A stretch of DNA of 64,000 nucleotides, from positions 62,001-126,000 of IMG/VR virus record IMGVR_UViG_3300032245_001860; one strand, given 5' to 3'. The notes under the pieces were generated by a model. It searched no databases. It had not been told where the DNA came from and saw nothing but the letters and a program-made list of their open reading frames with translations. The position numbers and the translations under genes were made by a program. This document shows positions 636 to 63,532 of the stretch, one piece after another. How positions within the stretch are numbered: position 1 is the stretch's first letter; every line of letters begins with the position of its first letter.

Positions 636-661
636 ATTCTGCCTTACTTGCTTTTTTTCTT
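636..661 (-). promoter_or_regulatory. candidate SigH-like late promoter AAGA-N17-AGAAT
   Basis: Same spacing as the AGGA-N17-AGAAW motif upstream of other tagged genes; 9 nt before the ATG at 626. Confidence 0.45.
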
Positions 662-696
662 GTTATTGTGTATTATCTAATTTGAGGTGATATAAA

Positions 697-1305
697 ATGT
701 TTGTACCAGAAAGCAGATCCTGGAAAGAATTGTTTGTTTATGAAAGCAATTTGATAGATCCACAACCAGGCTATATAGGAAACTCTCCTGGTTGTCCGAT
801 GTTTGAAAATCACATGAATGCTATTAATTTTTGCCTAAGTAATGGCTGGGAGTTAAATGAAAATACTCCACTTGACATACATAGATTTTTAACTCGTGGC
901 ATACCTTTTTTTGAAGATCATAATTCATCAGGTAAATATAGAACAGTGGATGTTTGGATTGGCCATGATTTATGTCCTAATCCTATTTTAATTCCTAATC
1001 TTATGAATCAATGGTTTAAGATTACCAATAAAATGATGAATAGTTTTATTAACAAATGTGGCAATGAATCAGAAGCTCGTAAAATAGCTTGGATTTCGCA
1101 TCATATTTTTGAAACCATACATCCTTTTATAGATGGGAATGGAAGAACTGGTAGGCTTTTATTGGCCAAAATTTTACATGATTTAGGTCATGATCCAATT
1201 GTTGTAAGATTTGATGATAGATTTGAATATTATGATGCTATTCAAAGTTTTAGAGATCAATATTGGACTGGCAAGCAATTCATAATTACTGACTTCGAAA
1301 TGTAA
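697..1305 (+). CDS. Fic/Doc family protein (AMPylase-like)
   Basis: Intact Fic motif HPFIDGNGRTGR; GAGGTG RBS upstream. Confidence 0.9.
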   Translation: MFVPESRSWKELFVYESNLIDPQPGYIGNSPGCPMFENHMNAINFCLSNGWELNENTPLDIHRFLTRGIPFFEDHNSSGKYRTVDVWIGHDLCPNPILIPNLMNQWFKITNKMMNSFINKCGNESEARKIAWISHHIFETIHPFIDGNGRTGRLLLAKILHDLGHDPIVVRFDDRFEYYDAIQSFRDQYWTGKQFIITDFEM

Positions 1306-1332
1306 AAAACCGGGGTTTTTCCCCGGTTTTTT
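1304..1332. terminator. bidirectional intrinsic terminator
   Basis: aaaaaaccgggg-ttttt-ccccggtttttt between convergent genes. Confidence 0.85.
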
Positions 1333-2407
1333 ATAAGATTCTTACTGGTCCTGAAGATAAGTTGCTTGATGGTGTGCTTGGTGAAGAAATATTTTCATTT
1401 TCATTTTTTTCACCACCTGTAAAATCTTTTACTTTATCTTTGACAAATTTACCAGCTGTTCCAATTTTTTCTTCAATAGCTTGTACTAAATTTTCAAGCA
1501 TACCCTTGTCTTTATTGTCAAGATTCATTTTTTCAATTTCTTTTAATAGTTCAGAAGATTTTTCCACAAGTGTATTTGCAAGATTAATATCTATTTGCTC
1601 TAATGCATCTGACATTTTAGATATTTTATAAGATAAATCTTTTGATTGGAGATAAGCTTTTCCAGTGTTAGAAATATTTCTATACCAAAGATCTTCAGCG
1701 CCTTTTGTAAGTACATTTCCAGCCCCACCAGTTAGACTTCCAACTAATGCTCCAATTGGTCCACCTATAACACCACCAGCTGCACCCCCTGCTAAAGCAC
1801 CAGTAAAAAACTCTCTTAAGTAACCCGGCATTTCTTCTTCAATATTTCCTCTTATTGCCAGTTTTTGAGTTTTTGCATTGTAAACTTTTCTGAAATTAAT
1901 ATTACAAGCAGTTTTTACTGTTTCTTTGCCTTCATCAAACTTTTTCATTCCTTCTTTTGCCAATTCTTTAATTTGATCTGTAAGTTGAGAAACTGTTGGT
2001 GATGGTATTAATTTATTAATTACAACAAGAATTTTATCTAAATCAGTTTTATTTGATTGATAGACTTTATATGGGCCCTGTGAAGATTCAAAGAAATCTA
2101 AGGCATAATTTGCACCCATATCAACAAGCCAACCTACTCCGAAACCCTTAAGAGCAGACCCAGGATTAACTTTCACTTTGGTGGGAAATTTCTTAACCAA
2201 TTCTTCTGTTAATTTTTTGCCCCCAGCTAATTCCAAAGCTCTGTCTGCAGCTTCATCGCCAACTATTCTTTCTCCAGTTTCAATTTGAGCAGGAGTTTGA
2301 GCAAGCTTTATGTATTCTTTATTTAATAAATAAGCTTCAAGGTGATATTCTTGTGCATCCAAGTCATCAATAAGTTTTGCTAATTTTATAAGTTGTTCGT
2401 TTTTCAT
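1331..2407 (-). CDS. hypothetical protein with N-terminal KLA tag and glycine zipper; putative virion/ejection protein
   Basis: 358 aa; starts MKNEQLIKLAKLIDDLDAQEYHLEAYLLNKEYIKLAQ; GALAGGAAGGVIGGPIGALVG glycine zipper. Confidence 0.6.
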   Translation of the reverse strand: MKNEQLIKLAKLIDDLDAQEYHLEAYLLNKEYIKLAQTPAQIETGERIVGDEAADRALELAGGKKLTEELVKKFPTKVKVNPGSALKGFGVGWLVDMGANYALDFFESSQGPYKVYQSNKTDLDKILVVINKLIPSPTVSQLTDQIKELAKEGMKKFDEGKETVKTACNINFRKVYNAKTQKLAIRGNIEEEMPGYLREFFTGALAGGAAGGVIGGPIGALVGSLTGGAGNVLTKGAEDLWYRNISNTGKAYLQSKDLSYKISKMSDALEQIDINLANTLVEKSSELLKEIEKMNLDNKDKGMLENLVQAIEEKIGTAGKFVKDKVKDFTGGEKNENENISSPSTPSSNLSSGPVRIL

Positions 2408-2410
2408 ATC

Positions 2411-3661
2411 TTAAAACATCTGAATGAATTTATTTATTATAGTAGTTTGATCATTAATTGGAACATTGTCTGCTTGCAATTTGTGTTTCAATTCACTTAA
2501 TGATTTATTATAGTTTTTAGTTCTTGTGTAAAGTGAATATCCATAACCCAAATACATCTTGATATCTGTAGGTTTATTTATTGTTTGTACTGGCGCTTTA
2601 CTTGACATTTGATCTGAAGTTTGTTTAGATAAATTTGTTGGCTTAGACTTTGGCTTCAATAATGATTTTTGTAACTCTTTCTTAAGTGCTCCAACAAATT
2701 GCATAAACTGCATATATTTAAATTGATTTTCAGAACTTGTAGGATTTCTCAACCAGACATATTTTTTAGTAAGGTTAGGATTATTCAATATTTCTCTATT
2801 TGAGATAAATTTATTTTGTTGCATGATTGGCTGCAAATCATTTATGGCTTTTTTTACATCGGGATCTGCAGATGCTAATAACTGATCTATATTTGCTGAT
2901 AATGAATAGTCATTCTCAGCAATTTGTGTCTTGAAATCATCTTTTTCACCAGTATATCTCAGATAAGAATCAATGCCTTGTCTCCCAAGAGAAGACAAAC
3001 TTGCTGTTGCATATAATGCACCACCAATGCCTTTAGTGATAGGAAGAGGAATAGAAACTAAAACAGCTGCAATTGCAAGTAAACAAACTTCTATAAACTT
3101 AGCTCTTTCTTCTGCATCATTCCAAATTTGATTAAACTTACCAGCAGATATCAAGTCTATATATTTTGCAATATCTTTTCTTGACTGATAGAGATTAATT
3201 ACAATTCCCAGCAAAGGTAAGAATTTTACAAATCTTGCAAGTCCTGGAATTTTTGTAGCAATTTTTGCTAAGAATCCCTCAGCTTCTGCAGCTTTGGGAC
3301 TTTTTTTAGCAATATCAGCAAAAGTCTTTAATTTTGAAAGATGTTCACGAGCATCTGCTGCACTTCCAGCTGCATCCAATACATCAAATCCTGCGAATGC
3401 TCCTGCTTCTATAGCACCTTTTGCTCCTGATGATAGATTACTTTTTTGCAGATAATTAAAAGGCATTTTGATAGCATTGCCAATTGCTGTTTCTGCAATA
3501 TCATCATTCTGAATCCATTTTTGATTACTTAGTCCCAAACCATTATTTGCTGCAAATCTTTTGTTGACTAATTTCTCATAGAAATCAGCTTGTTCATAAA
3601 ATCCGTAGGAATCACACAATTCCGCATAGGATATACAATTTTGGGCAGAAAGTCTAATCAT
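2411..3661 (-). CDS. hypothetical protein with tag-like N-terminus and hydrophobic helices; putative virion/ejection protein
   Basis: 416 aa; AELCDSYGFYEQADFYEKLVNKRFAA resembles the tag of 8264-9616; hydrophobic segments FLPLLGIVINL and CLLAIAAVLVSIPL. Confidence 0.6.
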   Translation of the reverse strand: MIRLSAQNCISYAELCDSYGFYEQADFYEKLVNKRFAANNGLGLSNQKWIQNDDIAETAIGNAIKMPFNYLQKSNLSSGAKGAIEAGAFAGFDVLDAAGSAADAREHLSKLKTFADIAKKSPKAAEAEGFLAKIATKIPGLARFVKFLPLLGIVINLYQSRKDIAKYIDLISAGKFNQIWNDAEERAKFIEVCLLAIAAVLVSIPLPITKGIGGALYATASLSSLGRQGIDSYLRYTGEKDDFKTQIAENDYSLSANIDQLLASADPDVKKAINDLQPIMQQNKFISNREILNNPNLTKKYVWLRNPTSSENQFKYMQFMQFVGALKKELQKSLLKPKSKPTNLSKQTSDQMSSKAPVQTINKPTDIKMYLGYGYSLYTRTKNYNKSLSELKHKLQADNVPINDQTTIINKFIQMF

Positions 3662-3673: not shown

Positions 3674-3699
3674 ATTATAAAAATAATTGCTTGGAACCT
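3674..3699 (-). promoter_or_regulatory. candidate late promoter AGGT-N17-ATAAT
   Basis: Variant of the AGGA-N17-AGAAW motif upstream of the 3661 start. Confidence 0.4.
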
Positions 3700-3704: not shown

Positions 3705-4166
3705 ATGACACAAAGAGATGCATACGAGTTGTTTTTTCCTTTGATAGAAAATTCAGGAAAAACATTTCACAAATCTTCATTAGTTTATGCAGAATTGGCT
3801 AAGGGTGGAGAGTTTATTGAAACTTGGACTAATGATGGACTGGAAACAACTAATTATGCAAACGCTGGAGATTTTATTGTCCAAAATCTACAAACAGAAA
3901 ATCTCGAAAAATATGTTGTGCCACCTGATATGTTTAAGTCAAGGTATAAGTTTTTTTACTGGCACGATAATGGAGCTATCTGTATACCTTTAGGGAAAGT
4001 TAGAGCTATACAATATATTGGTGAAGATACACAGTTCATTGCTAAATGGGGCAGATTGATGATTTTAAAGACTGGTGATTTTATTGTATCTCCAGCGCCA
4101 GATTTTCAAGAAGTATATAGAATAGCAAGAAAAGAATTTTTTGAAACTTATGAGGAAGATTTGTAA
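3705..4166 (+). CDS. hypothetical protein, PGDYG-like, with two internal repeats
   Basis: Repeats NAGDFIV...EKYVVPPDMFKSRY and KTGDFIV...EVYRIARKEFFETY; ATG at 3705 preferred to TTG at 3687. Confidence 0.6.
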   Translation: MTQRDAYELFFPLIENSGKTFHKSSLVYAELAKGGEFIETWTNDGLETTNYANAGDFIVQNLQTENLEKYVVPPDMFKSRYKFFYWHDNGAICIPLGKVRAIQYIGEDTQFIAKWGRLMILKTGDFIVSPAPDFQEVYRIARKEFFETYEEDL

Positions 4167-5254
4167 TGTGGTACAAAACAGCTAAATATGGCTATATTGA
4201 TGTCCAAAAATATTTTGAAGAACAATTAGGATATGAATTAAATTTCAAAATTGAAGATTATTTAGAATATATAATAAAAAAATCTTCCAAAATTGTTCAT
4301 GGTATGATGCGCATTGATTTTGATAAATTGAATAATGAACTTCAAAATTCTCCTCTTAATTTCTTAATCAAAAGATTCGGATCTATGGAAGAATTGACTG
4401 AAGGTAATAGAGAAGGTATTGGTGCTTGGATACCATCTATGAAATATTTACTTCTAATACCTCAATTTCCAGCACAAGTTTTATTTAAAATTGTTGATGT
4501 AGCTATGCACGAACTTGCACATGCTCTGGATAAAAGAGCAGGAAAATACCCAGATGATAAATATTTTCTTATACATTTCAAAGCATTAGCTCCAATTATC
4601 ACACAGTATATGACACAGTTTTATAATGATAAAAAACAATTACTTTCAAGAGAACAAGTTTGGGATATTTTTCTAAATCTTATTGTGAAAGATATGAATA
4701 TTCCAGACGACAACAAACCTTTAAGAGAATTCCAAAGGACATTTACTGAATCTCTATGGTCGCAGAAAAAAGATGAGATATTGGATCATATTTTTGCTAT
4801 CGTAAGTAATAATCTAACTGACGATGATTCAATGGAAGAATTTTTACTCAGAGAATATTATAACTTGCCTGTAGAAGCACCAGCACAATTAAACTCATTG
4901 TATAGAGAATCATTGCCTCAGAGATTATTAGAATCTGCATTTCTTGCATATATCTCACATATATATTCTCCAAACCTAATACAAAAACTCAATCTTGATC
5001 CTAATGAAAGAAACCCTGAAGTAATTTTCAAAAAATTACAAGAAATGATTCCTGGTTTTGTGAATGCTGAAATGAAAGAAGATTTTATCAACTACATAAG
5101 GATAGAAATTTTTGATGATGTTGATAATTCTAATATATTAATTGATGGAAAAAATTTCTTGAAATCAATTAGAAAGAAACACATAAGAAGACAAGCTTAT
5201 AAAATCTTAAATGAAAATTTTGCAGAGTTTAAAAAATTAGTAGAAGCTTTGTAA
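4166..5254 (+). CDS. MWYK-tagged zincin-like metallopeptidase domain protein
   Basis: N-terminus MWYKTAK; HELAHALD (HExxH) plus downstream YYNLPVEAPA with a candidate third-ligand Glu. Confidence 0.65.
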   Translation: MWYKTAKYGYIDVQKYFEEQLGYELNFKIEDYLEYIIKKSSKIVHGMMRIDFDKLNNELQNSPLNFLIKRFGSMEELTEGNREGIGAWIPSMKYLLLIPQFPAQVLFKIVDVAMHELAHALDKRAGKYPDDKYFLIHFKALAPIITQYMTQFYNDKKQLLSREQVWDIFLNLIVKDMNIPDDNKPLREFQRTFTESLWSQKKDEILDHIFAIVSNNLTDDDSMEEFLLREYYNLPVEAPAQLNSLYRESLPQRLLESAFLAYISHIYSPNLIQKLNLDPNERNPEVIFKKLQEMIPGFVNAEMKEDFINYIRIEIFDDVDNSNILIDGKNFLKSIRKKHIRRQAYKILNENFAEFKKLVEAL

Positions 5255-6731: not shown

Positions 6732-6757
6732 AAAATCCCCCATAAGGGGGATTTTTT
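6730..6757. terminator. bidirectional intrinsic terminator
   Basis: aaaaaatccccc-ataa-gggggatttttt between convergent genes. Confidence 0.85.
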
Positions 6758-7463
6758 ATTTAAACTTGTGTTGCCATTTTTCCATAAAATTCTTTTCAAG
6801 CCCAAAAGTATGTTTGTAATATTGCTTTGACTCTGCAAGAATCTTATGACTTGATTGTCCAAAGTGATCTACATGAGATGCTGCTACCAATGCATGTTTA
6901 GATCCTTTTTCTTCTAACCTCATTGTAATATCATTGTCTTGATAGAAAAATGAAAATTGCTCATCTAATGGAAATAACCATTCTCTTACTGACTTCTTCA
7001 TAGCCCAAAACCAACCGCAGAAATGATAAGCAATCATATATCCCTCAACAACTTTATTGTTAGGTGTAAATCTGTGCTTCATTTCAACTTGCGGAATAAT
7101 ACCAACTTGTTCTCTTGGAGATCTTGGTGAAGCAGTGTCTAAATTGTGCTTTACCATAGCATCTCTAAGCTTTTCCCACCACCCCTCATGAAAATGAACA
7201 TCATTATTTGAAACAGCAGAATAATCACACACACAATGTTTTACTGCTTCATTTAAGTACACATTGTAATTGAAAGATTGTTCTGGCTTCAAGTAAAGAT
7301 CAACAGGGAATTCATAAGAAGTGTCTTTATTTGACTCAACTAAAATGATATTGTAAAGATCTTCTTTAGATGATTTTCTTAAACTATTCACTGCATCCAA
7401 AGTCATACGGTAAATATCATTATTTGCTGTATTTGTAAGCATAATAATATCAACTTGTTTCAT
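6756..7463 (-). CDS. glycosyltransferase family 2
   Basis: VDIIMLT...IILVES...FNYNVYLN...SNNDVHF...PLDEQFSFFYQDND...VDHFGQSS GT-A motifs. Confidence 0.8.
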   Translation of the reverse strand: MKQVDIIMLTNTANNDIYRMTLDAVNSLRKSSKEDLYNIILVESNKDTSYEFPVDLYLKPEQSFNYNVYLNEAVKHCVCDYSAVSNNDVHFHEGWWEKLRDAMVKHNLDTASPRSPREQVGIIPQVEMKHRFTPNNKVVEGYMIAYHFCGWFWAMKKSVREWLFPLDEQFSFFYQDNDITMRLEEKGSKHALVAASHVDHFGQSSHKILAESKQYYKHTFGLEKNFMEKWQHKFK

Positions 7464-8182: not shown

Positions 8183-8216
8183 AATTGATACCTCTAAATA
8201 AGTTATACCAAAATAA

Positions 8217-9625: not shown

Positions 9626-9652
9626 ATTGCAAAAAAGTTACTGCTTACTCCT
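9626..9652 (-). promoter_or_regulatory. candidate late promoter AGGA-N17-TGCAAT
   Basis: AGGA box with conserved spacing upstream of the 9616 start. Confidence 0.45.
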
Positions 9653-11671: not shown

Positions 11672-11688
11672 TACAATATTTATACATA

Positions 11689-16234: not shown

Positions 16235-16260
16235 TTTCTTTTATAGAAGTGTTGCATCCT
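16235..16260 (-). promoter_or_regulatory. candidate SigH-like late promoter AGGA-N17-AGAAA
   Basis: Exact motif and spacing upstream of the operon starting at 16198. Confidence 0.55.
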
Positions 16261-43224: not shown

Positions 43225-43251
43225 ATTTCTAAAAAGATGCAATATAATCCT
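43225..43251 (-). promoter_or_regulatory. candidate SigH-like late promoter AGGA-N17-AGAAAT
   Basis: Exact motif 7 nt before ATG 43217; overlaps the TATAAT of the divergent gene. Confidence 0.6.
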
Positions 43252-48928: not shown

Positions 48929-49624
48929 ATGGCGACCGAAGATCCAAAAATTGTAAGAATAGTTCAAAAAGCAAAAAAAGGTGACGAAAAATCTTTTAAA
49001 ATGCTGCTTAAGATGGTAGATGGTGACTTGCGTAAAATCGCAGGTCATTATTTTATTCTTGGCGGTGACCGTGAAGATGTCATGCAAGAGTTGAGACTTG
49101 GAGTTTACAAAGCAGTAAATTCATATGACCCAACAAAAGACACCACTTTTAAAAACTTTTGTGTTAATTTAGTTTGTAAGAGACATTTAGCAACAGCCAT
49201 TTCGTCTGCAAAAAGAATGAAAAATTCAGTGTTGAATGATTCTATTTCTTTAGATGCTCCAATTATTTTAGGAGATGACGGCAATTTACAAACTCTTGCA
49301 GACTTTATTCCAGAAAAACAAAACCCATACGATGAATCACCAGAAGTTAATCTTGTTGAAGATATCATAATCAAAGAAGAATATGAAATCAATACACAAA
49401 AACTATTAACAAGACTTACTCCATTAGAAGCTGAAATTTTTAATGAGTATGGACTTAATTCATCATATAAAGAAATTTCAATTACTCTTAATGTTCCTGC
49501 CAAATGCGTTGACAATGCACTTACAAGAATTAGAAAAAAAGCTAATGAAGTGTATATTCAATACAGAAAAGATGATGAAAAGAAGGAACCATATGGAGAA
49601 ATTGATAAAAACCCTAACAAGTAA
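48929..49624 (+). CDS. sigH: SigH-like RNA polymerase sigma factor
   Basis: YFILGGDREDVMQE..LGVYKA, TAISSAKRMK..LNDSISLDAPI, SYKEI...KCVDNALTRIRKK, characteristic of SigH. Confidence 0.85.
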   Translation: MATEDPKIVRIVQKAKKGDEKSFKMLLKMVDGDLRKIAGHYFILGGDREDVMQELRLGVYKAVNSYDPTKDTTFKNFCVNLVCKRHLATAISSAKRMKNSVLNDSISLDAPIILGDDGNLQTLADFIPEKQNPYDESPEVNLVEDIIIKEEYEINTQKLLTRLTPLEAEIFNEYGLNSSYKEISITLNVPAKCVDNALTRIRKKANEVYIQYRKDDEKKEPYGEIDKNPNK

Positions 49625-52784: not shown

Positions 52785-52791
52785 TTTATGA

Positions 52792-53355
52792 ATGCAAGAT
52801 AACTATGAACATATTAATAAGCTTGTAGAGTTGTGTAAAAATGATGACTCTGATGCATTATTTCAACTATACGATTTCTACAAGCCATTATTGCTTTCAT
52901 CAGTAAGTCGTTGCATATATAAAAATCCAAAGCTTTCAAGATATAGAGAAGATATCTTCAGAGAGTCAGTGTTTGTACTGAAAAAGTTGATTGATCAATA
53001 CGATCCAACTCTTACTTATTTTTCTTACTTTTTATCAACCAGAATAGATATTAATCTTTTTAGATATGTAACTGACAAATACCAAACAGATGAATACTTT
53101 ATTGAAGACTATTGCCCAGACGAAGATTCATATGATCCGTTTAATAAAATAAATAGTGCAATTTCAATTCATGCAGCTTTGACAAAATTGAATGAAAAGC
53201 AACGTGAAGCTATTGAATTGTATTTTTTTGAAGGATTAGATCAAGAACAAGCATCAATTAAATTAAATATCACCCAAAGTTCTTTTTCAAAAAGATTGCA
53301 ACGAGGCTTATCTAAGATGAAAGAACTACTGGGTGATGATTTCTTACTTGACTAA
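52792..53355 (+). CDS. sigma-70 family sigma factor (regions 2 and 4, ECF-sized)
   Basis: ALFQLYDFYKPLL, YDPTLTYFSYFL, LNEKQREAIELYFFEGLDQEQASIKLNITQ; TATAAT 6 nt before the ATG. Confidence 0.85.
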   Translation: MQDNYEHINKLVELCKNDDSDALFQLYDFYKPLLLSSVSRCIYKNPKLSRYREDIFRESVFVLKKLIDQYDPTLTYFSYFLSTRIDINLFRYVTDKYQTDEYFIEDYCPDEDSYDPFNKINSAISIHAALTKLNEKQREAIELYFFEGLDQEQASIKLNITQSSFSKRLQRGLSKMKELLGDDFLLD

Positions 53356-56160: not shown

Positions 56161-56309
56161 AATACTTATTATGTTTTGTAAAAGAACTAAAAAATCCTAT
56201 GGAATAAAATTTCTAATTTTATGTAATATACTTATATGTTCCAAGAAATCCCTTAAGACACGCTATAACTACGTCTGAGGGATATTTTTCTTTTAAGGGG
56301 AGAATCACT

Positions 56310-57041: not shown

Positions 57042-57068
57042 AAACAAGCCGCTATATGCGGCTTGTTT
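57042..57068 (+). terminator. intrinsic terminator
   Basis: aaacaagccgc-tatat-gcggcttgttt. Confidence 0.8.
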
Positions 57069-57089
57069 TGCTTTTGTATAAAATTTACT

Positions 57090-57776
57090 ATGTCAGATAA
57101 AAATGAAGAAATTGTTGATGTAATTGTACCTGCGTCAGAAAAAGTAGTAACTGGGCCTGCTAAGTTATTCAGAGAATTGAAGGAAACAGATAAACCATAT
57201 CACCCTTTACCTCCTGACAACATGAATGACATTTCTTATCCTCAATTTTTAGAACCAAGGTGCTCAATTTGTTCTTCCCCATTTAGAGATTTAGCAGAAC
57301 ATGTATTTCTTGAAAGTGGTAAGAAACCCCAGTCTGTCATTCAATTCTTTGCTCATTATTTTGATGCTAAACTAAATTGGATGCAGATTAACACTCATAT
57401 GGAGCAACATTGTGATTTCAAAAAAATCTCAACATCTGGTTTAAAAAATTATGAGCAAAGAGAAGAACTTATTGCTCCTTGGATTTTTAGAGAACACCAG
57501 TTAGCTCTCACTGCTCTTTTAGTTGAACTTGATGATGTAAGGGGCATGGATTGTTCCAAAAACAATGACTTAAAGCTTAAAAGAGCATCTATGGTTGAAA
57601 AGTTAATTAGTAAAATCTTATATGTAAAAGAACAAAGAGATAATCAAGGTGTTTTTGCTATAAACATATTTGAAATTCTTGTCAAATTGCACGAACAAAT
57701 GGAAAGTGAAGCAGATAAGAAAATTATCAGAGATGAGATGCAATTTTTAAGACAAAAAATACAAGCTGATAACTAA
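57090..57776 (+). CDS. putative terminase small subunit
   Basis: CSIC...HMEQH Zn/HTH-like N-terminus, helical C-terminus; TAATG-coupled to TerL. Confidence 0.55.
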   Translation: MSDKNEEIVDVIVPASEKVVTGPAKLFRELKETDKPYHPLPPDNMNDISYPQFLEPRCSICSSPFRDLAEHVFLESGKKPQSVIQFFAHYFDAKLNWMQINTHMEQHCDFKKISTSGLKNYEQREELIAPWIFREHQLALTALLVELDDVRGMDCSKNNDLKLKRASMVEKLISKILYVKEQRDNQGVFAINIFEILVKLHEQMESEADKKIIRDEMQFLRQKIQADN

Positions 57777-59893
57777 TGAGAAAACCTAACCTTCAAAAAA
57801 CTCAACAAAATGATGCCAAATCTCAACTTCTTCTACAAGCATCTGAAGTTGAGAAGTTTTTTAAGGAATCAGAATATGCTGGAGAATTTTCTGATGATAT
57901 TGTTCCTGCAACAAGAGCTGAAGTAATTCCTCCACCAGCACCTGAAAAATCAAGATTCAATCCTGATAAAATTGTTGATATCATCACATTTATTGAGCAT
58001 CCTTATTTTTGCAACCTCAAGCCTTATCCTTGGCAGAAACTTATCCTTAAGTGTTTTTATATGGGTCAAGAGGGTAATACAAATCTTGTAATAAATAATG
58101 TCAAGCAAGAAACAGGATGCGATGGTTGTGTGTGGAGTTATATCAAGGAAAATGAAGATCTTTTTTATAAATCCAGAAAGAACCAGAAACAAATAAAAAC
58201 AATCTTTTCAGTAGTTAATTCTCCCTGTCTAACATGTAACCGCTTGAATGATGAAGTAAGAAACGAAAGATATGAAGCTGCTAAAGAAGAAGCCACAAAT
58301 CCAGATGCCGAAAGACAAGTAGAAGAATTATCTCAAAGAGCAATACTTGATAATTTTGAAACAGAAAATGATCTTTTATACTCTGATGAATTTGATCCAA
58401 AGTTAAGAGTTCAAGTAAATGAAAAAAGCTCAAAAAGATACAAATTTCAAGAGTTAGTGTTAGTGCTTGGCAGACGTTCAGGAAAATCATTCTTAGTGTC
58501 TGCTATGGCTCTTTATGAACTATATAGGCTTATTTCTATGGGACATCCTCAATCAAGATATGGGCTGATGGAATTTGATGAAATAGTATTACTTAATGTA
58601 GCTCGTAATGAAGAACAGGCAAAGAAAGCAATCTTCTCTAAAATCAAACAAACGGTTTTAGCTTCTCCTTTTTTTCAACCTTACATTGGAAAAGATACAG
58701 AACTCGAAATGAGATTCTATACTGAAAATGATGTCAAAGAAAATGAAAGAAGAGCATCGAGAAACTTAAATCCTTTTGCTGGCTCTTTAGTTTTAAGATG
58801 TGGTTCAAGTAATGCTTCTGGTCTTGTAGGTCTTACTTGTTGGTGTATCATTATGGACGAAGTTGCAGCTATGGCAGGAGATAATCCTGACTCTGGTGTT
58901 GACTATGCTCTATATGATGATCTGAAGCCATCACTTGCTACATTTGGTAAAGATGGAAAGATGATGATGCTTTCCAACCCTAAAGGTCCGCTTGGATTGC
59001 TTTATGATTTACATGAAAATAGATTAGAAGACCCTGCAACTCTTGTAATGAGATTGCCCACTTGGTTAACTAATCCGAACATTGATAAAGCTTGGCTTGA
59101 TGATCAAAAAAAGAAAAATCCAGTTGAGTTTACTATGCAATATGGTGCTGAGTTTGGAGCTGCATCTTCAGACCCAATGTTTGATCAAGATTCTATCAAA
59201 AGAATGTTTTCTTCAATGAGAATGACACCAAGATTAGAATTTGCACAACCACAAGTTGATTATTACTGTCACTTGGATCCTGCAAGAACTTCAGACTACT
59301 ATGCCTTAGCTGTATCTCACACTGAAGAAATATATGGAACTGTGGGTCCCGATTTCAAACCACTTAAAAGAGTGGTTATTGATCACATTCATTTTTGGAA
59401 TCCGCAAACAAAAAATCAACCTATTTCTGAAAGAGAAGTTGAAAATTATGTAATTGATTTACATAGAAGATTTAAATTTAAACAAGTTAGTATTGATCAA
59501 TGGAATTCTCAGTCTTCTGTAATAACTCTTCAAAGCAGAGGTGTGCCAATTATTGAAAGACAGTTCAATAAAGAATACAAAGAAAAGATTTACACAGAAC
59601 TGACACAGCTTATCAGAGAAGATAGAATAGATATTTATGACCTTTCAAGTGGTGCATATTTAGATGCGCAAAACAATAAACATAATTTGAATGAAATAGA
59701 AGAAGCTAAAATTCAATTTTTATTCTTACAAAAGAAATGGAAAGGTAAAAGATACTACATTGAAGCTTTATCGGGATACAAAGATGATATTTGTGATGCT
59801 ATAGCTGCTGTCAGTTATGAAGCCTTAACAAATAAAATTATCACAAGATCTCCAAGAAATAGAATGGTCAGTTTGGGTGGCAGGTATAGATAG
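57776..59893 (+). CDS. terL: terminase large subunit
   Basis: YPWQ, LGRRSGKS Walker A, IIMDEVA Walker B, LSNP coupling motif, HLDPA and KDDICDAIA nuclease motifs. Confidence 0.88.
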   Translation: MRKPNLQKTQQNDAKSQLLLQASEVEKFFKESEYAGEFSDDIVPATRAEVIPPPAPEKSRFNPDKIVDIITFIEHPYFCNLKPYPWQKLILKCFYMGQEGNTNLVINNVKQETGCDGCVWSYIKENEDLFYKSRKNQKQIKTIFSVVNSPCLTCNRLNDEVRNERYEAAKEEATNPDAERQVEELSQRAILDNFETENDLLYSDEFDPKLRVQVNEKSSKRYKFQELVLVLGRRSGKSFLVSAMALYELYRLISMGHPQSRYGLMEFDEIVLLNVARNEEQAKKAIFSKIKQTVLASPFFQPYIGKDTELEMRFYTENDVKENERRASRNLNPFAGSLVLRCGSSNASGLVGLTCWCIIMDEVAAMAGDNPDSGVDYALYDDLKPSLATFGKDGKMMMLSNPKGPLGLLYDLHENRLEDPATLVMRLPTWLTNPNIDKAWLDDQKKKNPVEFTMQYGAEFGAASSDPMFDQDSIKRMFSSMRMTPRLEFAQPQVDYYCHLDPARTSDYYALAVSHTEEIYGTVGPDFKPLKRVVIDHIHFWNPQTKNQPISEREVENYVIDLHRRFKFKQVSIDQWNSQSSVITLQSRGVPIIERQFNKEYKEKIYTELTQLIREDRIDIYDLSSGAYLDAQNNKHNLNEIEEAKIQFLFLQKKWKGKRYYIEALSGYKDDICDAIAAVSYEALTNKIITRSPRNRMVSLGGRYR

Positions 59894-59916
59894 AGTTAGA
59901 TTTATAATATACAAAT

Positions 59917-60945
59917 ATGTCTTCAAAGAATATTAAAACTGCTCAATTTGGTGGCGTTGGTGGAGGTGGAAATGGTTCACCTTTTGCACCTGGAAAAAGC
60001 CCGATTGGATCTGGTGGAAAAAACCCAGGAGGTTATGAAGTTAACTCTGACTGGGACGAAAACAAAACGCTTGAAAAAATGCTGTCAAAAACCCATGAAG
60101 ATATGGATCTGTCTGATAGAAATTTCGAATCAAGATTAACACCACAACATAAATTTTTTGAAGAAAACAAAGCTTATGTCTTAACTCCAGCTGAAAGATT
60201 GAAAGAAAAGTTCAGAGCTGAATTACACGCTTACAAAAAATCTTTAGAAGAGCATGCTGACAGTTTACATAAAAATTCAGTCAAATATATTCAAGAACAT
60301 TACAAACTGACTGACGATGACTTACAAACAATGGAACAAAGATTACATCAAAGAAGACATTTTGATGATTCCAAGAAAAGACAATTCAAATATGAAGATC
60401 AAGTTCCAGATCAAATAAAGCCAGAAAGAGCACATCCAGTTTTATCAGATACACAAATGAATCGTATTGCTACCATTGTCATGAGAGACAAAATTACTCA
60501 AGAAAATGACGAAGATGTAGAACAAAGAAACATTTTTGATAAAAAGAGATTTACTTACCCTCCTATTGGAAGAACACCAGTGCTTACTCGTGGTGATGAA
60601 TTAGGTCAATATTTTGAAGATGTGTTACATGAATACACCCCAGAGTCAAATGGTGCTATGGAAGTCGGAGATCTTGTAACAGATGAAACCAATCCTGATT
60701 ACGAACCAAATATTCATCCTCGTAATGAAATAGCCAATGAACCGGCTGATGATGAATTAGATGGCATAAATGTATTTCAAACATTAGAAGGCAATTTGCA
60801 TAATAAAAAAGCACCTGATAATCAATTTGACAGAAATAATATGTCATCAGATAAAGAAAAATTTGGTGACGAAGATATGGGTGTTGAAGATGTTTACAAA
60901 GGTTCTGCTTGGTTTGGGTCTCATACTCCAGCTTCATTTGGATAA
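59917..60945 (+). CDS. tagged hypothetical acidic protein
   Basis: MSSKNIKTAQFGGVGGGGNG; AGGT-N18-ATAAT upstream. Confidence 0.65.
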   Translation: MSSKNIKTAQFGGVGGGGNGSPFAPGKSPIGSGGKNPGGYEVNSDWDENKTLEKMLSKTHEDMDLSDRNFESRLTPQHKFFEENKAYVLTPAERLKEKFRAELHAYKKSLEEHADSLHKNSVKYIQEHYKLTDDDLQTMEQRLHQRRHFDDSKKRQFKYEDQVPDQIKPERAHPVLSDTQMNRIATIVMRDKITQENDEDVEQRNIFDKKRFTYPPIGRTPVLTRGDELGQYFEDVLHEYTPESNGAMEVGDLVTDETNPDYEPNIHPRNEIANEPADDELDGINVFQTLEGNLHNKKAPDNQFDRNNMSSDKEKFGDEDMGVEDVYKGSAWFGSHTPASFG

Positions 60946-60961
60946 TCTGTAAAATAATCAT

Positions 60962-62083
60962 ATGAAATATGATTATTTGATTATTGGAGCAGGTTTATTT
61001 GGATCTATATTTGCACATGAAGCTAATAAACTGGGCAAAAAAGTATTAGTTATAGAGAAAAGAAATCATATTGGTGGAAATTGTTACACTGAACAATATG
61101 AAGACTATCATATACACACTTACGGTCCACATATTTTCCATACTTCTCAAAAATATATTTGGGATTATATAAATCAATTCACAGAATTCAATAATTATTC
61201 GCATAGAGTAAAGTCAAATTATCAAGGCAAGCTTTATTCTATGCCTATCAACTTAATGACTTTGCATCAAGTATGGCCTGAAATTATTACGCCAGAAGAT
61301 GCTAAAAAGAAAATAGAATTAGAAATTATTCCTTGTGAAAATCCTAAAAACTTAGAAGAACATATATTGAGCATGGTTGGACCTACTTTGTATCAATATT
61401 TTATTCATGGATATACAAAGAAACAATGGGGCACAGATCCTAAAAATCTTCCAGCATCGATCATAAAAAGATTGCCAATTAGATATAATTTCAATGATAG
61501 ATGGTTTCATGACCATGATATTTATGAAGGCATTCCTGTTAATGGATATACTCCTATTTTTCACAAGCTCTTAGAAGGCATAGAAACTATTACTAATATT
61601 GATTATTTTGCAGATAGAACATACTGGGATTCAAAAGCCAATAAAGTTGTTTTTTCAGGTCAAATTCAACAATATTTTGATTACATGTTTGGCGATTTAG
61701 AATACAGAACATTAGAATTTCATAGTTACAAAATTCCTAATTCTGATTTTCAAGGATGTTCTATAATTAATTATCCCGATCCAGAAACAAGATGGACAAG
61801 AATAACTCAACACAGACACTTTACAAACTCAAAATCTACAAATGATTATGTTACATACGAATATTCTAAAAACTATGACAAAAATAATCCAGAGCATATT
61901 CCTTATTACCCTGTAAACACACCAACAAACAATGAAACTTACAACAAATACAAAGAATATTTAGAAATAAATCATTCTAACATTATTGTTGGTGGAAGAT
62001 TAGGCAATTACAGGTACTACGATATGGATATGACAATAGGTAACGCATTAGCTACAGTAAAAAAAGAATTTGCAGGAAAATAA
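60962..62083 (+). CDS. glf: UDP-galactopyranose mutase
   Basis: GAGLFG, HIGGNCY, YGPHIFHT, YTKKQWG, RLPIR, PYYP, GRLGNYRYYDMD. Confidence 0.95.
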   Translation: MKYDYLIIGAGLFGSIFAHEANKLGKKVLVIEKRNHIGGNCYTEQYEDYHIHTYGPHIFHTSQKYIWDYINQFTEFNNYSHRVKSNYQGKLYSMPINLMTLHQVWPEIITPEDAKKKIELEIIPCENPKNLEEHILSMVGPTLYQYFIHGYTKKQWGTDPKNLPASIIKRLPIRYNFNDRWFHDHDIYEGIPVNGYTPIFHKLLEGIETITNIDYFADRTYWDSKANKVVFSGQIQQYFDYMFGDLEYRTLEFHSYKIPNSDFQGCSIINYPDPETRWTRITQHRHFTNSKSTNDYVTYEYSKNYDKNNPEHIPYYPVNTPTNNETYNKYKEYLEINHSNIIVGGRLGNYRYYDMDMTIGNALATVKKEFAGK

Positions 62084-62107
62084 TATAACGAATGCAAAAA
62101 ACATATT

Positions 62108-62170
62108 ATGTCTGTCTCTTCAATGAACCTAAAAATAAAAGAAGACAAATATTTTAATGGAACAATATAA
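62108..62170 (+). CDS. possible 20-aa leader ORF
   Basis: MSVSSMNLKIKEDKYFNGTI*, TAATG-coupled to 62170 and just downstream of an AGGA box at 62074. Confidence 0.35.
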   Translation: MSVSSMNLKIKEDKYFNGTI

Positions 62171-62622
62171 TGCCACAAAAAATATCTTCAGAAATTAACA
62201 ATCTAATTAAAAAAGCAAAAATTTTAGATTCATTAGGAAAATTTAAAGAGTCAGATAATATTTTTGTAAAGTTATCCCAATATTACGTAGAGCAATCAGT
62301 CACCAAAGTTCCATCTGTTCAATATTTTGAAATGGATGAAATTGCTGATGAGTACGAAGAAAATGAAAAAAACTATCGTACTAAAAAACCCAATCTTCGT
62401 GTCCCTCAATATTTTGATTTAGGTGTTGGTGAAGATGAAGAAAACTTAGAGGGTAAACTCAACGGTCCTGATAGTGTTCCTGGTCCTGCTTATATAGACC
62501 CAGGTAATCTTGCCTCAAGCCCATCAATGGCTGGAGATGTTGATTGCTTTACTTGGGAAGAAACTTACGAAAAGAATGTTGATGAAGGCAATGGATGGAA
62601 AAATAGAATTCCATTGAGATAG
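62170..62622 (+). CDS. tagged hypothetical protein
   Basis: LIKKAKILDSLGKFKESDNIFVKLSQ tag. Confidence 0.65.
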   Translation: MPQKISSEINNLIKKAKILDSLGKFKESDNIFVKLSQYYVEQSVTKVPSVQYFEMDEIADEYEENEKNYRTKKPNLRVPQYFDLGVGEDEENLEGKLNGPDSVPGPAYIDPGNLASSPSMAGDVDCFTWEETYEKNVDEGNGWKNRIPLR

Positions 62623-62630
62623 GAGAAATT

Positions 62631-63122
62631 ATGCCAATTCCAATTAAACCAGTTCATTCATTAGATTTGCATGCTGAAATTTTTGATTCACCCTCAATGG
62701 AAGGCTTAGGACTGTCAGACATCCAAATCCAACTTTTGGGTATGACCGCAGCACCTAAAAAAGAAGCATCTGTAAAATTAAGCGAAAGATACATTTCTAT
62801 GCTTAAGGATATTGATAAAAACATTAACGAAGTTGTTACTGCTGCAAATGCTGCTGTTAATAACAAAGATGGAAAAGTTTGCACAGTTCCAGGTGAAATC
62901 TCAGACAATGATCTTTTAGCACTTAAAACTGCAGGATTGATCAGTGGTTATGGCAGATCTGTTTCCTTGACAGATAAAGCAAAATTAGCTTTGAGAGATT
63001 TTTATCTTAGCACAGATACAACTAATGAATTCAGAAAATCAAGAACAAAAGAAAAATTTGATTTAAATGAAGCAAGAACAGTGAAGGTTTCAAACACAAA
63101 ATTTATACGTGTTGCAACTTGA
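62631..63122 (+). CDS. hypothetical protein
   Basis: AGGAG RBS; ends FIRVAT-TGA in frame with the next domain. Confidence 0.7.
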   Translation: MPIPIKPVHSLDLHAEIFDSPSMEGLGLSDIQIQLLGMTAAPKKEASVKLSERYISMLKDIDKNINEVVTAANAAVNNKDGKVCTVPGEISDNDLLALKTAGLISGYGRSVSLTDKAKLALRDFYLSTDTTNEFRKSRTKEKFDLNEARTVKVSNTKFIRVAT

Positions 63123-63506
63123 CTGAGCAAATCTGACGAACTGGATGTTCGCTTTATAGCAAAAGATGATCATTCAAGGGCAAAAGGCTTAATGCATGCA
63201 AAGCCCTTAAATGAACTTGAAGTAGCATATTTTATATTTCCAACAGAAGATTGTCATTCATTTTGGAATAAAAATGTAGATTTTTCATTAACTTTAGCTT
63301 TTTTAGATAAAGATAATGAGATTGTTGATTTCAAAGACTTAGAAAAGCAAAGTCCTAAACTTGTTAGCCCAGATTCAAACAGAGTTAAATTTGTTGTAGA
63401 AGCTAATAAAGGATTATTCGAAAAACTTGGAATTAAAACTGGGGATAAGCTTATCCTTAAAAATAATAAACTTATAGTTGAAAAAAACCACAAAACAAAA
63501 CCTTAA
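63123..63506 (+). CDS. DUF192-like protein (start uncertain)
   Basis: LDVRFIAKDDHSRAKGLMHAKPL...FIF...SFWNKNVDFSLTLAFLD...FVVEANKG...IKTGD; the domain begins upstream of ATG 63192. Confidence 0.75.
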   Translation: MSKSDELDVRFIAKDDHSRAKGLMHAKPLNELEVAYFIFPTEDCHSFWNKNVDFSLTLAFLDKDNEIVDFKDLEKQSPKLVSPDSNRVKFVVEANKGLFEKLGIKTGDKLILKNNKLIVEKNHKTKP

Positions 63507-63532
63507 AGGAAATTGAGCCTTTTTTTTAGAAG
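63507..63532 (+). promoter_or_regulatory. candidate SigH-like late promoter AGGA-N17-AGAAG
   Basis: Motif upstream of the 63597 gene. Confidence 0.55.

What the first reader, a model, noticed from the sequence alone, without database searches (positions are those of the whole stretch)
636..63532. SigH-like promoter motif AGGA-N17-AGAAW marks the tagged and structural genes
Seen upstream of tagged genes: AGGA-17-AGAAAT (43251-43225, -), AGGA-17-AGAAA (16260-16235, -), AGGA-17-AGAAG (63507-63532, +), AAGA-17-AGAAT (661-636, -), AGGA-17-TGCAAT (9652-9626, -) and AGGT-17-ATAAT (3699-3674, -). Weaker matches are at 59882 (+), 62074 (+) and 56198 (-). Established: the Bacillus sigmaH consensus is AGGA followed about 17-18 nt later by GAAT. 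The window encodes its own SigH homolog (48929-49624). Inference: a captured SigH acts as the late sigma factor. The promoter class and the protein tag independently pick out largely the same gene set.
Basis: partly seen in the sequence, partly recalled or inferred. Interest (0 to 1): 0.8.

Follow-up and report, generated by a model that had tools for sequence, protein, structure and literature searches.

The report
Phage sigma-H-like promoter class, virion genes
A widespread, uncultivated freshwater jumbo phage carries a conserved two-box promoter-like signal (AAGG, 17 bases, A-G/A-A-A) in front of its head-module and "tagged" genes. The signal matches the promoters read by sigma-H-type factors, one of which the phage encodes, so this is a real but conventional phage sigma-plus-promoter arrangement that still lacks any transcript evidence.

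Summary
The window is part of a 316-kb freshwater jumbo-phage contig with more than 190 relatives in IMG/VR. All nine listed sites exist at the stated coordinates.

The window-wide count of the exact pattern (7 found, 2.7 expected) is not meaningful evidence. Five of the seven hits are intragenic, and in coding DNA spacer 17 is no commoner than spacers 14, 20 or 23 because of codon periodicity.

The evidence lies elsewhere:
- In non-coding DNA of the family, spacer 17 stands alone.
- The two boxes are kept in orthologous upstream regions while spacers and leaders diverge.
- A matrix trained only on distant relatives ranks five reader sites (16260, 3699, 43251, 63507, 56198) among the top 16 of 127,942 window positions.
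- The same matrix found three new sites outside the window, next to the portal gene and before another tagged gene.

Sites 59882 and 62074 are supported by orthology only. Sites 9652 and 661 are unsupported.

The refined consensus is rAAGG(T/A)T-N17-A(G/A/T)AA. It usually lies so that transcription would begin at the ATG, giving leaderless mRNA. The sigma at 48929-49624 is SigH-like but scores below the family cut-offs, and it is nearly invariant across the family.

The link between this sigma and this promoter, and the late timing, remain inferences. This is a new member of a known kind.

The parts
48929..49624 (+). SigH-like sigma factor (231 aa), the proposed reader of the motif. It lies between the clamp-loader gene (47847-48890) and purA / beta-clamp in the replication module. 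It has an SD-type start and no promoter of its own.
   Evidence: Pfam Sigma70_r2 and r4_2. Best NCBIfam hits are SigH models, E 9e-34, 115-117 bits, below cut-offs of 208-295. Best PDB hit is 3mzy sigma-H, E 2e-14. Family members are 74-97% identical, and nearly all residues of regions 2 and 4.2 are invariant across them. Neighbouring genes.
16235..16260 (-). Promoter-like site AGGA-N17-AGAAA, 62 nt upstream of the 863-aa gene 13607-16198. That gene heads a tightly packed, co-oriented run of genes reaching 10838. The leader would be about 30 nt and has no clear SD.
   Evidence: Rank 3 of 127,942 with its own orthologues left out. Both boxes and the N17 spacing are kept in L090, L091/L092 and L093 (83%, 57%, 49% and 38% protein identity) while the leader diverges completely.
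63507..63532 (+). Promoter-like site AGGA-N17-AGAAG, 90 nt upstream of the gene starting at 63597, which runs off the window. The leader carries a GAGGAG SD. Downstream genes continue in the same orientation up to the portal gene.
   Evidence: Rank 7. The form AAAGG[AT]-N17-AGAA[AG] is present in 11 of 11 non-redundant orthologous upstream regions, against 2 at N15 and 1 at N19. The downstream + strand gene and the portal are shown.
56173..56198 (-). Promoter-like site AGGA-N17-AAAAC, with AGG 38 nt before the ATG of the 938-aa gene 53344-56160 (N-terminus MWNYK). There is no SD.
   Evidence: Rank 16. Orthologues carry AAAGG[TA] or AAGGG, then N17, then AAAAT, with the box 9-10 nt before ATGTGGTAC.
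3674..3699 (-). Promoter-like site AGGT-N17-ATAAT, with AGG 38 nt before the ATG of 2411-3661. The gene 1331-2407 follows directly. There is no SD.
   Evidence: Rank 6. Only a close relative (L090) covers this region, so there is no deep conservation test.
43226..43251 (-). Promoter-like site AGGA-N17-AGAAA, with AGG 34 nt before the ATG of the MWYK-tagged gene 42747-43217. This gene is a lone minus-strand gene inside the nucleotide-metabolism block.
   Evidence: Rank 7. The site is conserved only in relatives of 95% identity or more (L083-L085). It is absent upstream of the orthologue in L087 (86%) and L088 (60%).
59882..59907 (+). Orthologous promoter position in front of 59917-60945, the gene after the large terminase. 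The window form is AGGT-N17-TATAA, so the -10 box is atypical. The AGG is the third-from-last codon of the terminase gene.
   Evidence: The window copy scores poorly, rank 1222. Even so, 15 of 17 non-redundant orthologous upstream regions carry AAGGT-N17-A(G/A)AA with AGG at -34/-35. In every distinct terminase 3' end listed with the G-R-F/Y-R/K ending, the Arg codon at that position is AGG, although AGG makes up only 5.6% of Arg codons.
62074..62099 (+). Orthologous promoter position, AGGA-N17-CAAAA, at the 3' end of glf. It is followed by a 19-codon mini-ORF (62108-62167) and then by 62170-62622.
   Evidence: Rank 86. In 7 of 16 non-redundant relatives, AGG[TA]-N17-ATAA[GAC] lies 9-10 nt before the ATG of the 62170 orthologue.
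9627..9652 (-). It is not supported as a member of the class.
   Evidence: Rank 148. The AGGA lies in the conserved last codons (Y-E-Q-E-stop) of the upstream gene. The -10 part is TGCAA here and TGTAT in L091, neither of which fits the class.
636..661 (-). It is not supported; at best it is a weak variant.
   Evidence: Rank 351. It lacks the GG that every training site has. No relatives cover this region. Gene function.
52792..53355 (+). Second sigma factor, ECF-type (187 aa), the rival candidate reader. It has its own TGTATAAT box 6 nt before the ATG, a leaderless sigma-70-type arrangement.
   Evidence: NCBIfam sigma70-ECF superfamily, E 1e-17. The conserved TCTGTATAAT box lies 6-7 nt before the ATG in relatives, where the protein is only 52-62% identical.

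Best explanation
The sites belong to a phage-specific promoter class with consensus rAAGG(T/A)T-N17-A(G/A/T)AA. The most likely reader is host core RNA polymerase carrying the phage-encoded SigH-like sigma (48929-49624).

That sigma gene has no promoter of its own. It sits in the replication module, whose neighbouring genes carry sigma-70-type promoters (TTGCCA-N17-TAGAAT, TGTATAAT). The sigma should therefore be made early or in the middle of infection, and then switch on a separate set of transcription units: the genes between large terminase and portal, the genes after the portal, the 863-aa operon, and isolated genes whose products carry the N-terminal MWYK-type tag.

In most units, AGG lies at -34/-35 and the A(G/A)AA box at -13 to -10 relative to the A of the ATG. 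Transcription would then start at or 1-3 nt before the start codon, giving leaderless mRNA. Two units (16260, 63507) and the two sites next to the portal have leaders of about 30-60 nt; the 63507 leader carries a clear GAGGAG SD and the 16260 leader has none.

Shown: the motif, its spacing, its conservation, its gene-set specificity, and the sigma's SigH-like character. Inferred: that it is a promoter, that this sigma reads it, that expression is late, and that the mRNAs are leaderless.
For: Spacing specificity appears only in non-coding, promoter-competent DNA.

The boxes are conserved in four orthologous upstream sets while spacers and leaders diverge, down to 38% protein identity.

The rare Arg codon AGG is kept in the listed terminase 3' ends wherever the -35 box overlaps the terminase gene.

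Leave-own-orthologues-out ranks of 3 to 16 among 127,942 positions for five sites.

Out-of-sample hits on the same contig outside the window:
- AGGT-N17-AGAAC and AGGT-N17-AGAAT, each just after a terminator-like hairpin, upstream of the 1405-aa and 533-aa genes that follow the portal.
- AGGT-N17-CTAAA with AGG at -34 of an MWYK-tagged NlpC/P60 gene.

The motif is absent from 24 other orthologous groups.

Geometry: 18 nt lie between AGGW and GAA, and published SigH promoters have AGGA, a 17-18 nt spacer and GAAT (PMC12456013).

The sigma matches SigH models at 115-117 bits, against about 56 bits for the generic sigma-70/ECF model and about 30 for other named sigmas. Its best PDB hit is sigma-H 3mzy.

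The sigma is 74-97% identical across the family, and nearly all residues of its DNA-reading regions are invariant. This matches a promoter that does not change across the family. The ECF-type sigma is only 52-62% identical.

Leaderless reading: TGTATAAT starts at -14 in 22 of 25 occurrences. In the window, 26 genes have an SD and 10 have a -10 hexamer starting at -14 to -11, and none has both. A TANNNT signal about 12 nt before the start codon is the accepted signature of leaderless genes (PMC3160421).
Against: No transcript 5' ends exist: no RNA run was listed.

The -10 box is loose. G is no commoner than A at its second position, and the final T of GAAT is usually A or C. It therefore matches SigH's GAAT only partly.

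AGGT is commoner than AGGA in the family.

The sigma fails the curated SigH cut-offs.

A second phage sigma exists.

The 43251 site is not conserved in relatives of 86% and 60% identity.

The matrix alone is not specific: several equally high hits lie inside genes.

The products are of unknown function, so 'late' and 'virion' rest on gene linkage.

The host is unknown, so compatibility of a SigH-type sigma with the host core enzyme is assumed.
Confidence: 0.6

Rival explanations
1. The motif is a real promoter class, but it is read by the second phage sigma (the ECF-type protein at 52792-53355) and not by the SigH-like one. The SigH-like sigma would then serve another, unrecognised set of promoters.
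For: The ECF-type sigma is conserved in position across the family and is expressed from its own sigma-70-type leaderless promoter, so it is an early product. No other promoter class could be assigned to it.
Against: From general knowledge, ECF promoters typically carry an AAC-containing -35 box and a CGT/TC-type -10 box. The motif has neither. AGGA at -35 is the hallmark of SigH among characterised sigmas. The ECF-type protein diverges quickly (52-62% identity), whereas the motif and the SigH-like sigma barely change.
Confidence: 0.12
2. The AAGGT box is the binding site of a phage activator that redirects the host primary sigma, in the manner of the T4 MotA box at -30 with AsiA. Alternatively, it is read by a host alternative sigma. 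In either case the phage sigmas are not involved.
For: The -10 part is A-rich and weakly defined, and some members carry near-canonical TATAAT or ATAAT (59882, 3699). Many window proteins are of unknown function and could include such a factor.
Against: The -10 box lacks the T at -12 and the T at -7 that a primary sigma needs. The strict N17 spacing and the -35 position are typical of direct sigma region 4 contact. A sigma with the matching known specificity is encoded and nearly invariant in every relative examined.
Confidence: 0.13
3. The pattern is a by-product of AT-rich composition, codon periodicity and shared ancestry, and has no function.
For: Window-wide enrichment is marginal, and 5 of the 7 exact hits are intragenic. 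Family-wide counts show only a period-3 effect. Sites 661 and 9652 are at background level. The matrix also finds intragenic hits of similar score.
Against: N17 stands out only in intergenic, correctly oriented positions. The boxes persist while spacers and leaders are randomised. The rare AGG codon is fixed where the box overlaps the terminase gene. New sites were predicted correctly out of sample. The motif is restricted to a few orthologous groups.
Confidence: 0.04

Closest known systems
SigH (Spo0H)-dependent promoters of Bacillota (Bacillus subtilis, Clostridioides difficile, Sporomusa)
   Same: The -35 box is AGGA-like. The distance between AGGW and GAA is 18 nt, and the published spacer is 17-18 nt. 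The -10 box contains GAA in the strongest members (AGAAA, AGAAG, AGAAT, AGAAC). The cognate sigma has two domains and about 220-230 aa.
   Different: AGGT is commoner than AGGA. The -10 box is A(G/A/T)AA with a variable last base, not GAAT. The sigma is phage-encoded and scores below the SigH family cut-offs. The targets are phage morphogenesis-module genes, not stationary-phase or sporulation genes. Most promoters are phased onto the start codon, which would give leaderless mRNA.
Bacillus phage SPO1 sigma cascade (host sigma-A early, gp28 middle, gp34 late)
   Same: A phage-encoded sigma replaces the host primary sigma on host core RNA polymerase and reads a phage-specific two-box promoter in front of later gene classes (PMC13401047). 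From my own knowledge, the gp28 -35 box is AGGAGA, which also resembles this motif.
   Different: tblastn found no similarity between this sigma and any SPO1 record. Two sigmas are present here, but their order and targets are untested. Accessory factors like gp27 or gp33 were not identified.
Phage T4 late transcription (gp55 sigma, gp33, sliding clamp)
   Same: A phage sigma dedicated to virion genes. The sigma gene here lies between the clamp-loader and clamp genes, an arrangement that recalls the coupling of late transcription to replication in T4.
   Different: From general knowledge, T4 late promoters have only a -10 element (TATAAATA) and gp55 is a minimal sigma. Here there is a -35 box with fixed spacing and a full region 2 plus region 4 sigma. 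No gp33 homologue was seen.
Leaderless genes with a promoter -10 box about 12 nt before the start codon (Actinobacteria, Deinococcus-Thermus)
   Same: A -10 hexamer starts at -14 to -11 from the ATG in 10 window genes, and none of them has an SD. The AGG-class boxes have the equivalent phasing. This is the signature described in PMC3160421.
   Different: Here the phasing applies to two promoter classes in a 32% GC phage. One class would use a non-primary sigma. No transcription start data exist.

Membership tests
SigH (Spo0H) sigma factor family | Sigma-70 family protein with regions 2 and 4 | tested here: met
   Pfam Sigma70_r2 (residues 32-84) and Sigma70_r4_2 (residues 157-204), both above their cut-offs.
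SigH (Spo0H) sigma factor family | Scores above the curated cut-off of a SigH equivalog model | tested here: not met
   The best models are NF006148 (116.7 bits, cut-off 208) and TIGR02859 (114.7 bits, cut-off 294.8), aligned over nearly the full length. The protein is SigH-like, not an equivalog.
SigH (Spo0H) sigma factor family | Closer to SigH than to any other sigma subfamily | tested here: met
   SigH models reach 100-117 bits. The generic sigma-70/ECF model reaches 56 bits, and SigB/F/G, SigK and SigW reach about 30 bits or less. The best solved structure is 3mzy 'sigma-H factor', E 2e-14, against 4e-5 for ECF sigmas. A SigH-like ORF in records labelled Listeria phage is 34% identical. 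No tree was built.
SigH-dependent promoter class | -35 element AGGA | tested here: inconclusive
   AGG was required when the training sites were selected, so its invariance there is not an independent result. The next base is T in 57% and A in 36% of sites. The flanking positions, which were not selected for, carry extra information: R-A before AGG and T after it. The box is similar to, but not identical with, the AGGA cited.
SigH-dependent promoter class | 17-18 nt between the AGGA and GAAT elements | tested here: met
   AGGW-N17-A-GAA gives 18 nt. N17 is the only favoured spacing in intergenic DNA.
SigH-dependent promoter class | -10 element GAAT | tested here: inconclusive
   The strongest sites have AGAAA, AGAAG, AGAAC or AGAAT. 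Others have AAAAC, AAAAT, ATAAT or ATAAG. G is at 39% and the final base is rarely T.
SigH-dependent promoter class | Transcription from the site depends on the SigH-type sigma | not testable with these tools
   No RNA runs were listed and there is no biochemistry.
Phage sigma-cascade late promoters (SPO1 / T4 type) | A phage-encoded sigma plus a distinct consensus confined to a later, morphogenetic gene class | tested here: met
   Sigma genes. The motif is present in four orthologous groups of the terminase-portal module, in the 863-aa operon and next to the portal. It is absent from 24 other groups, including replication genes.
Phage sigma-cascade late promoters (SPO1 / T4 type) | Temporal switch during infection | not testable with these tools
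   The phage is uncultivated and there is no expression time course.
Leaderless mRNAs | Promoter -10 element about 12 nt before the start codon, and no SD | tested here: met
   The criterion comes from PMC3160421. The transcription start itself was not observed.

The most novel reading that the evidence does not exclude
A SigH-type sigma, a family otherwise tied to Bacillota, is the dedicated virion-gene sigma of an abundant freshwater jumbo-phage family whose host may not be a Bacillota member. Its promoters are phased onto the start codon, so the virion regulon is made as leaderless mRNAs. The same regulon is marked at the protein level by an N-terminal MWYK-type tag that also sits on enzymes (a NUDIX/HAD protein and an NlpC/P60 protein). 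This would amount to a coupled transcription, translation and packaging address system.
Probability: 0.3. Interest if true: 0.65.

Novelty: new member of a known kind. Interest (0 to 1): 0.45.

Why it matters
Almost none of this phage family's proteins match a known family. A validated promoter class therefore gives an annotation-free way to mark its morphogenesis and packaged-protein genes, and to define its transcription units across hundreds of metagenomic relatives.

It also pairs a small, nearly invariant sigma with a short defined promoter. That pair can be tested in vitro and could serve as an orthogonal expression part.

The phasing of both promoter classes onto start codons points to a host that translates leaderless mRNA well. 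This is a usable clue for host assignment.

Conceptually, it repeats the SPO1/T4 paradigm and does not overturn it.

Tried and rejected
- RNA evidence. Two searches for sequencing runs listed no RNA run, only freshwater DNA metagenomes.
- Function of the downstream genes. PHROGs and Pfam on about 25 proteins gave nothing, and the ESM Atlas look-alikes were uninformative. An AlphaFold model of the 863-aa protein (pLDDT 74.7) had no PDB fold match with E below 0.9. The abundant 533-aa protein proved to be acidic with a Zn ribbon, not an obvious capsid fold, so the second structure job was not spent on it.
- Relatives of the 0-33 kb region. Single-protein scans of IMG/VR found only the contig itself. 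This was solved through a homologue search followed by contig look-ups; two of those look-ups returned no DNA.
- A promoter for the ECF-type sigma. A CGTCT-like box upstream of 56310 turned out to be the 3' arm of a conserved leader hairpin. A blind dyad enumeration was swamped by hairpins and residual orthology.
- 'Group 20' AGGATGC sites were dropped because their upstream region looks like coding sequence.
- Intragenic or 3'-end hits at 27313, 49584, 11169, 37927 and 58146 score well but cannot be separated from coding constraint.
- Host. The only genome-collection hit is a 6.9-kb contig binned in a Bacteroidetes MAG. I do not trust it, because the phage uses SD sequences and TTGnnn/TATAAT-type promoters. 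The 'moraphage' paper describes a different lineage.
- The sigma-70 consensus scan tool gave no enrichment.

Full report
**What the window is.** The 64-kb window has about 32% GC. It is part of IMG/VR contig 3300032245_001860, which is 315,852 bp long. Its large terminase is 73-97% identical to those of at least 190 other viral contigs, and the DNA runs that hold it are freshwater and lake metagenomes.

The region from about 17 to 53 kb is a replication and nucleotide-metabolism module on the + strand. It encodes an SbcCD-like pair, an AAA ATPase, DnaC-like and DnaB proteins, primase parts, DnaE-type polymerase, RecA, RecJ, ribonucleotide reductase, dUTPase, a clamp loader, purA and a beta-clamp. 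The large terminase lies at 57776-59893. Further along the same contig there is a Mu-type portal. Nearly all other proteins have no recognisable family.

**Checking the observation.** All nine sites exist as described. The exact pattern AGGA-N17-AGAAW occurs 7 times against 2.66 expected, and 3 of 100 shuffles reach 7. Five of the seven hits are inside genes.

Over 1.07 Mb of family DNA, AGG[AT]-Nx-AGAA is equally frequent at x = 11, 14, 17, 20 and 23. That is codon periodicity, which dinucleotide shuffles do not model. Window-wide enrichment is therefore not evidence for the motif.

The picture changes in non-coding DNA:
- In 79 kb of family intergenic segments, N17 gives 105 hits (14 non-redundant). 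All other spacers from 11 to 24 give 0-43 hits (0-8 non-redundant).
- Within 16 nt of start codons, AGG[AT]-N17-AGAA occurs in 11 non-redundant upstream regions, against 0-3 for other spacers and 0-2 on the wrong strand.

**Conservation.** Four orthologous upstream sets keep the two boxes and the spacing while the spacer and leader sequences change.
- The gene after the terminase (59917). Anchored on the ATG with no motif selection, the profile shows AAaGgtt at -36 to -30 and an A-rich box at -13 to -10.
- The 938-aa gene 53344-56160.
- The gene starting at 63597. All 11 non-redundant relatives carry AAAGG[AT]-N17-AGAA[AG], 35-70 nt upstream of a GAGGAG SD.
- The 863-aa gene 13607-16198. AGG[AT]-N17-AGAAA is kept in relatives of 83%, 57%, 49% and 38% protein identity, and their leaders are unalignable.

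Where the -35 box overlaps the end of the terminase gene, the Arg codon at that position is AGG in every distinct sequence listed, while the neighbouring Arg codon is AGA. AGG makes up only 5.6% of Arg codons in the family. This points to a DNA-level constraint on top of the coding constraint.

**Scoring the window without circularity.** A matrix was built only from relatives whose terminase is under 80% identical to the window's. For each test, the site's own orthologues were left out. Ranks among 127,942 window positions were 16260 = 3, 3699 = 6, 43251 = 7, 63507 = 7 and 56198 = 16. The remaining sites ranked 62074 = 86, 9652 = 148, 661 = 351 and 59882 = 1222.

A two-block version that ignores the spacer sequence was run at spacers 13-22. 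At N17, 8 of 13 hits scoring at least 11 lie 30-110 nt upstream of a co-oriented start, a zone holding 4.4% of positions. At the other spacers, 0-2 hits do.

The matrix alone is not specific. Hits of similar score occur inside genes, for example at 37927, 58146 and 35364.

Per-site conclusions:
- Five reader sites are well supported: 16260, 3699, 43251, 63507 and 56198.
- 59882 and 62074 occupy orthologous promoter positions but have a degenerate -10 box in this subclade (TATAA and CAAAA).
- 9652 is not supported. Its AGGA lies in the conserved last codons of the upstream gene, and its -10 part is TGCAA here and TGTAT in L091.
- 661 is not supported. It has AAGA where every family site has AGG.
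- 43251 is conserved only in relatives of 95% identity or more.

**Out-of-sample test.** I walked along the same contig beyond the window. Among the highest matrix hits there were three new sites:
- AGGT-N17-AGAAC, just after a terminator-like hairpin, upstream of the 1405-aa gene that follows the portal.
- AGGT-N17-AGAAT, just after a hairpin, upstream of a very abundant 533-aa protein that is acidic and has a Zn ribbon.
- AGGT-N17-CTAAA, with AGG exactly 34 nt before the ATG of an NlpC/P60 gene whose product starts with MWYK.

**Gene-set specificity.** Across 33 orthologous groups that have at least three non-redundant upstream regions, the motif is concentrated in the 59917 group (15 of 17), the 63597 group (11 of 11), the 62170 group (7 of 16) and the 53344 group (2 of 5). 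Isolated hits occur in three further groups. It is absent from 24 groups, including replication genes, both sigma genes and the terminase genes.

Several motif-bearing genes carry the N-terminal tag: MWYKLAQ, MWNYK, MFNYKKIKLA and MWYKKA. Tagged genes that lie inside operons (4166, 1331, and the 171-aa MWYRK gene) have no promoter of their own, and the 63597 gene is not tagged.

**Geometry and the leaderless reading.** In most units, AGG lies at -34/-35 and the A(G/A/T)AA box at -13 to -10 from the A of the ATG. These are the canonical -35 and -10 positions if transcription starts at the start codon.

The phage's sigma-70-type promoters show the same phasing:
- TGTATAAT starts at -14 in 22 of its 25 occurrences in upstream regions.
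- purA has TTGCCA-N17-TAGAAT, with the hexamer ending 7 nt before the ATG.

Of 70 window genes, 26 have an SD-like motif and 10 have a -10-like hexamer starting at -14 to -11. None has both. A TANNNT signal about 12 nt before the start codon is the published signature of leaderless genes (PMC3160421). The transcription starts themselves have not been observed.

**The sigma factors.** The ORF at 48929-49624 has sigma-70 regions 2 and 4.
- Its best NCBIfam hits are five SigH models (E 9e-34 to 1.5e-28, 100-117 bits, nearly full length). All fall below the curated cut-offs of 208-414 bits.
- Other sigma models score 56 bits or less.
- The best solved structure is 3mzy, 'RNA polymerase sigma-H factor' (E 2e-14), while ECF sigmas reach 4e-5.
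- A SigH-like ORF in records labelled Listeria phage is 34% identical.
- The 120 best database hits are all family members of 74-97% identity. JGI names them 'sporulation-specific sigma factor'.
- Nearly all residues of regions 2 and 4.2 are invariant across the family.
- The gene sits between the clamp-loader gene and purA / beta-clamp, and has an SD but no promoter of its own.

A second sigma, of ECF type, lies at 52792-53355. It has its own leaderless TGTATAAT promoter and is only 52-62% identical among relatives.

**Linking sigma and motif.** Published SigH promoters have -35 AGGA and -10 GAAT separated by 17-18 nt (PMC12456013). The phage motif is AGG(T/A)-N17-A-GAA in its strongest members, which gives 18 nt.

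To my knowledge, no other characterised sigma class uses an AGGA -35 box. From general knowledge, ECF promoters use AAC and CGT-type boxes, which are absent here. A motif that does not change fits a sigma that barely changes better than it fits the fast-evolving ECF-type protein.

Against the link, the -10 box is looser than GAAT, AGGT is commoner than AGGA, and the sigma is below the family cut-offs. I therefore rate 'real promoter class' at about 0.85. I rate 'read by the SigH-like sigma and serving the morphogenesis and tagged gene set' at about 0.6.

**Comparison with known systems and novelty.** The arrangement works like the SPO1 cascade, in which phage sigmas gp28 and gp34 act on host core enzyme (PMC13401047). 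It also resembles the sigma-bearing group of jumbo phages described in PMC7824862. Sporulation-like sigmas in phages have been reported so far for phages of Bacillota (PMC9429907).

Here the family is an uncultivated freshwater lineage of unknown host. A promoter that matches the sigma's family could be defined, and it appears coupled to leaderless starts. This is a new member of a known kind. It is useful for annotating a protein-dark phage family, but it is not a new principle.

**Limits.** There is no expression data and no host. Most downstream proteins have no assigned function. The matrix columns for AGG and AA were fixed by the selection regex, so only the flanking columns, the spacing tests, the conservation tests and the out-of-sample hits count as independent evidence.

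Noticed in passing
window 3-626(-), 4166-5254(+), 42747-43217(-), 53344-56160(-), 13607-16198(-), 8264-9616(-), 1331-2407(-); L001 20276-20791; L096 18636-19271: A shared N-terminal tag: MWYK[LIT]A[QK], with looser variants such as MWNYK, MFNYKKIKLA and ..YIKLAK.LD. It also sits on enzymes: a NUDIX+HAD protein (3-626) and an NlpC/P60 peptidase outside the window. Orthologues keep ATGTGGTAC. It looks like a targeting or packaging signal and not a structural-protein feature.
   Followed up: partly
window 52792-53355 (+): A second sigma factor, of ECF type, with a conserved TCTGTATAAT box 6-7 nt before its ATG. No promoter class could be assigned to it.
   Followed up: partly
window-wide, e.g. 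49630-49670, 52770-52791, 57069-57089, 60946-60961, 11672-11690: Sigma-70-type promoters (TTGCCA-N17-TAGAAT, TGTATAAT, TGTAAAAT) are phased so that the -10 hexamer starts 14-11 nt before the ATG. Ten such genes and 26 SD-bearing genes do not overlap. This suggests widespread leaderless mRNAs and a host that translates them well.
   Followed up: partly
window 56247-56283 (+): A conserved hairpin in the 5' leader of the gene at 56310/56337, upstream of a strong AAGGGGAG SD. Its arms change in a compensatory way among relatives (CCCTTAAGAC/GTCTGAGGG against CCTCTAAGAC/GTCTGGAGG). The single-sequence fold is unremarkable (z = -1.0).
   Followed up: partly
window 57042-57068 (+): A strong bidirectional terminator hairpin (11 bp, 6 GC) conserved across the family. 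It is followed at once by a TTGTATAA box and a leaderless start for the gene ahead of the large terminase.
   Followed up: no
window 62108-62169 (+): A 19-codon mini-ORF lies between the orthologous promoter position (62074) and the gene 62170-62622, and its stop overlaps that gene's ATG. It is present only in the window's close relatives. Other relatives have the promoter 9-10 nt before the gene's ATG.
   Followed up: partly
window 697-1305 (+); 60962-62083 (+); 6756-8230 (-); 44804-47319 (-): A Fic-domain protein lies divergent from the tagged NUDIX gene. A UDP-galactopyranose mutase (glf) is inserted in the head module in only some relatives. There are two tandem glycosyltransferase-like paralogues and three tandem paralogues of unknown function that start MVDNYRVV.
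   Followed up: no
L096 13346-14521 (same contig, about 142.4-143.6 kb; outside the window): A gene with a RuBisCO large-subunit Pfam hit. It is followed by sugar-nucleotide, glycosyltransferase and GHMP-kinase genes, just downstream of the head module.
   Followed up: no
L094 (VEQB01000117.1, 6,960 bp): The only hit to the sigma in the species-genome collection is a short contig binned in a 'Bacteroidetes bacterium' MAG, at 76% identity. It is probably a mis-binned phage fragment. As a host clue it conflicts with the phage's SD use and its TTGnnn/TATAAT promoters.
   Followed up: no
window 13607-16198 (-): The 863-aa product of the gene with the best promoter site gives a fairly confident, mostly helical AlphaFold model with a central beta domain (pLDDT 74.7). 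It has no significant match in the PDB. Its N-terminus (residues 1-19, the tag region) is predicted to be disordered.
   Followed up: partly
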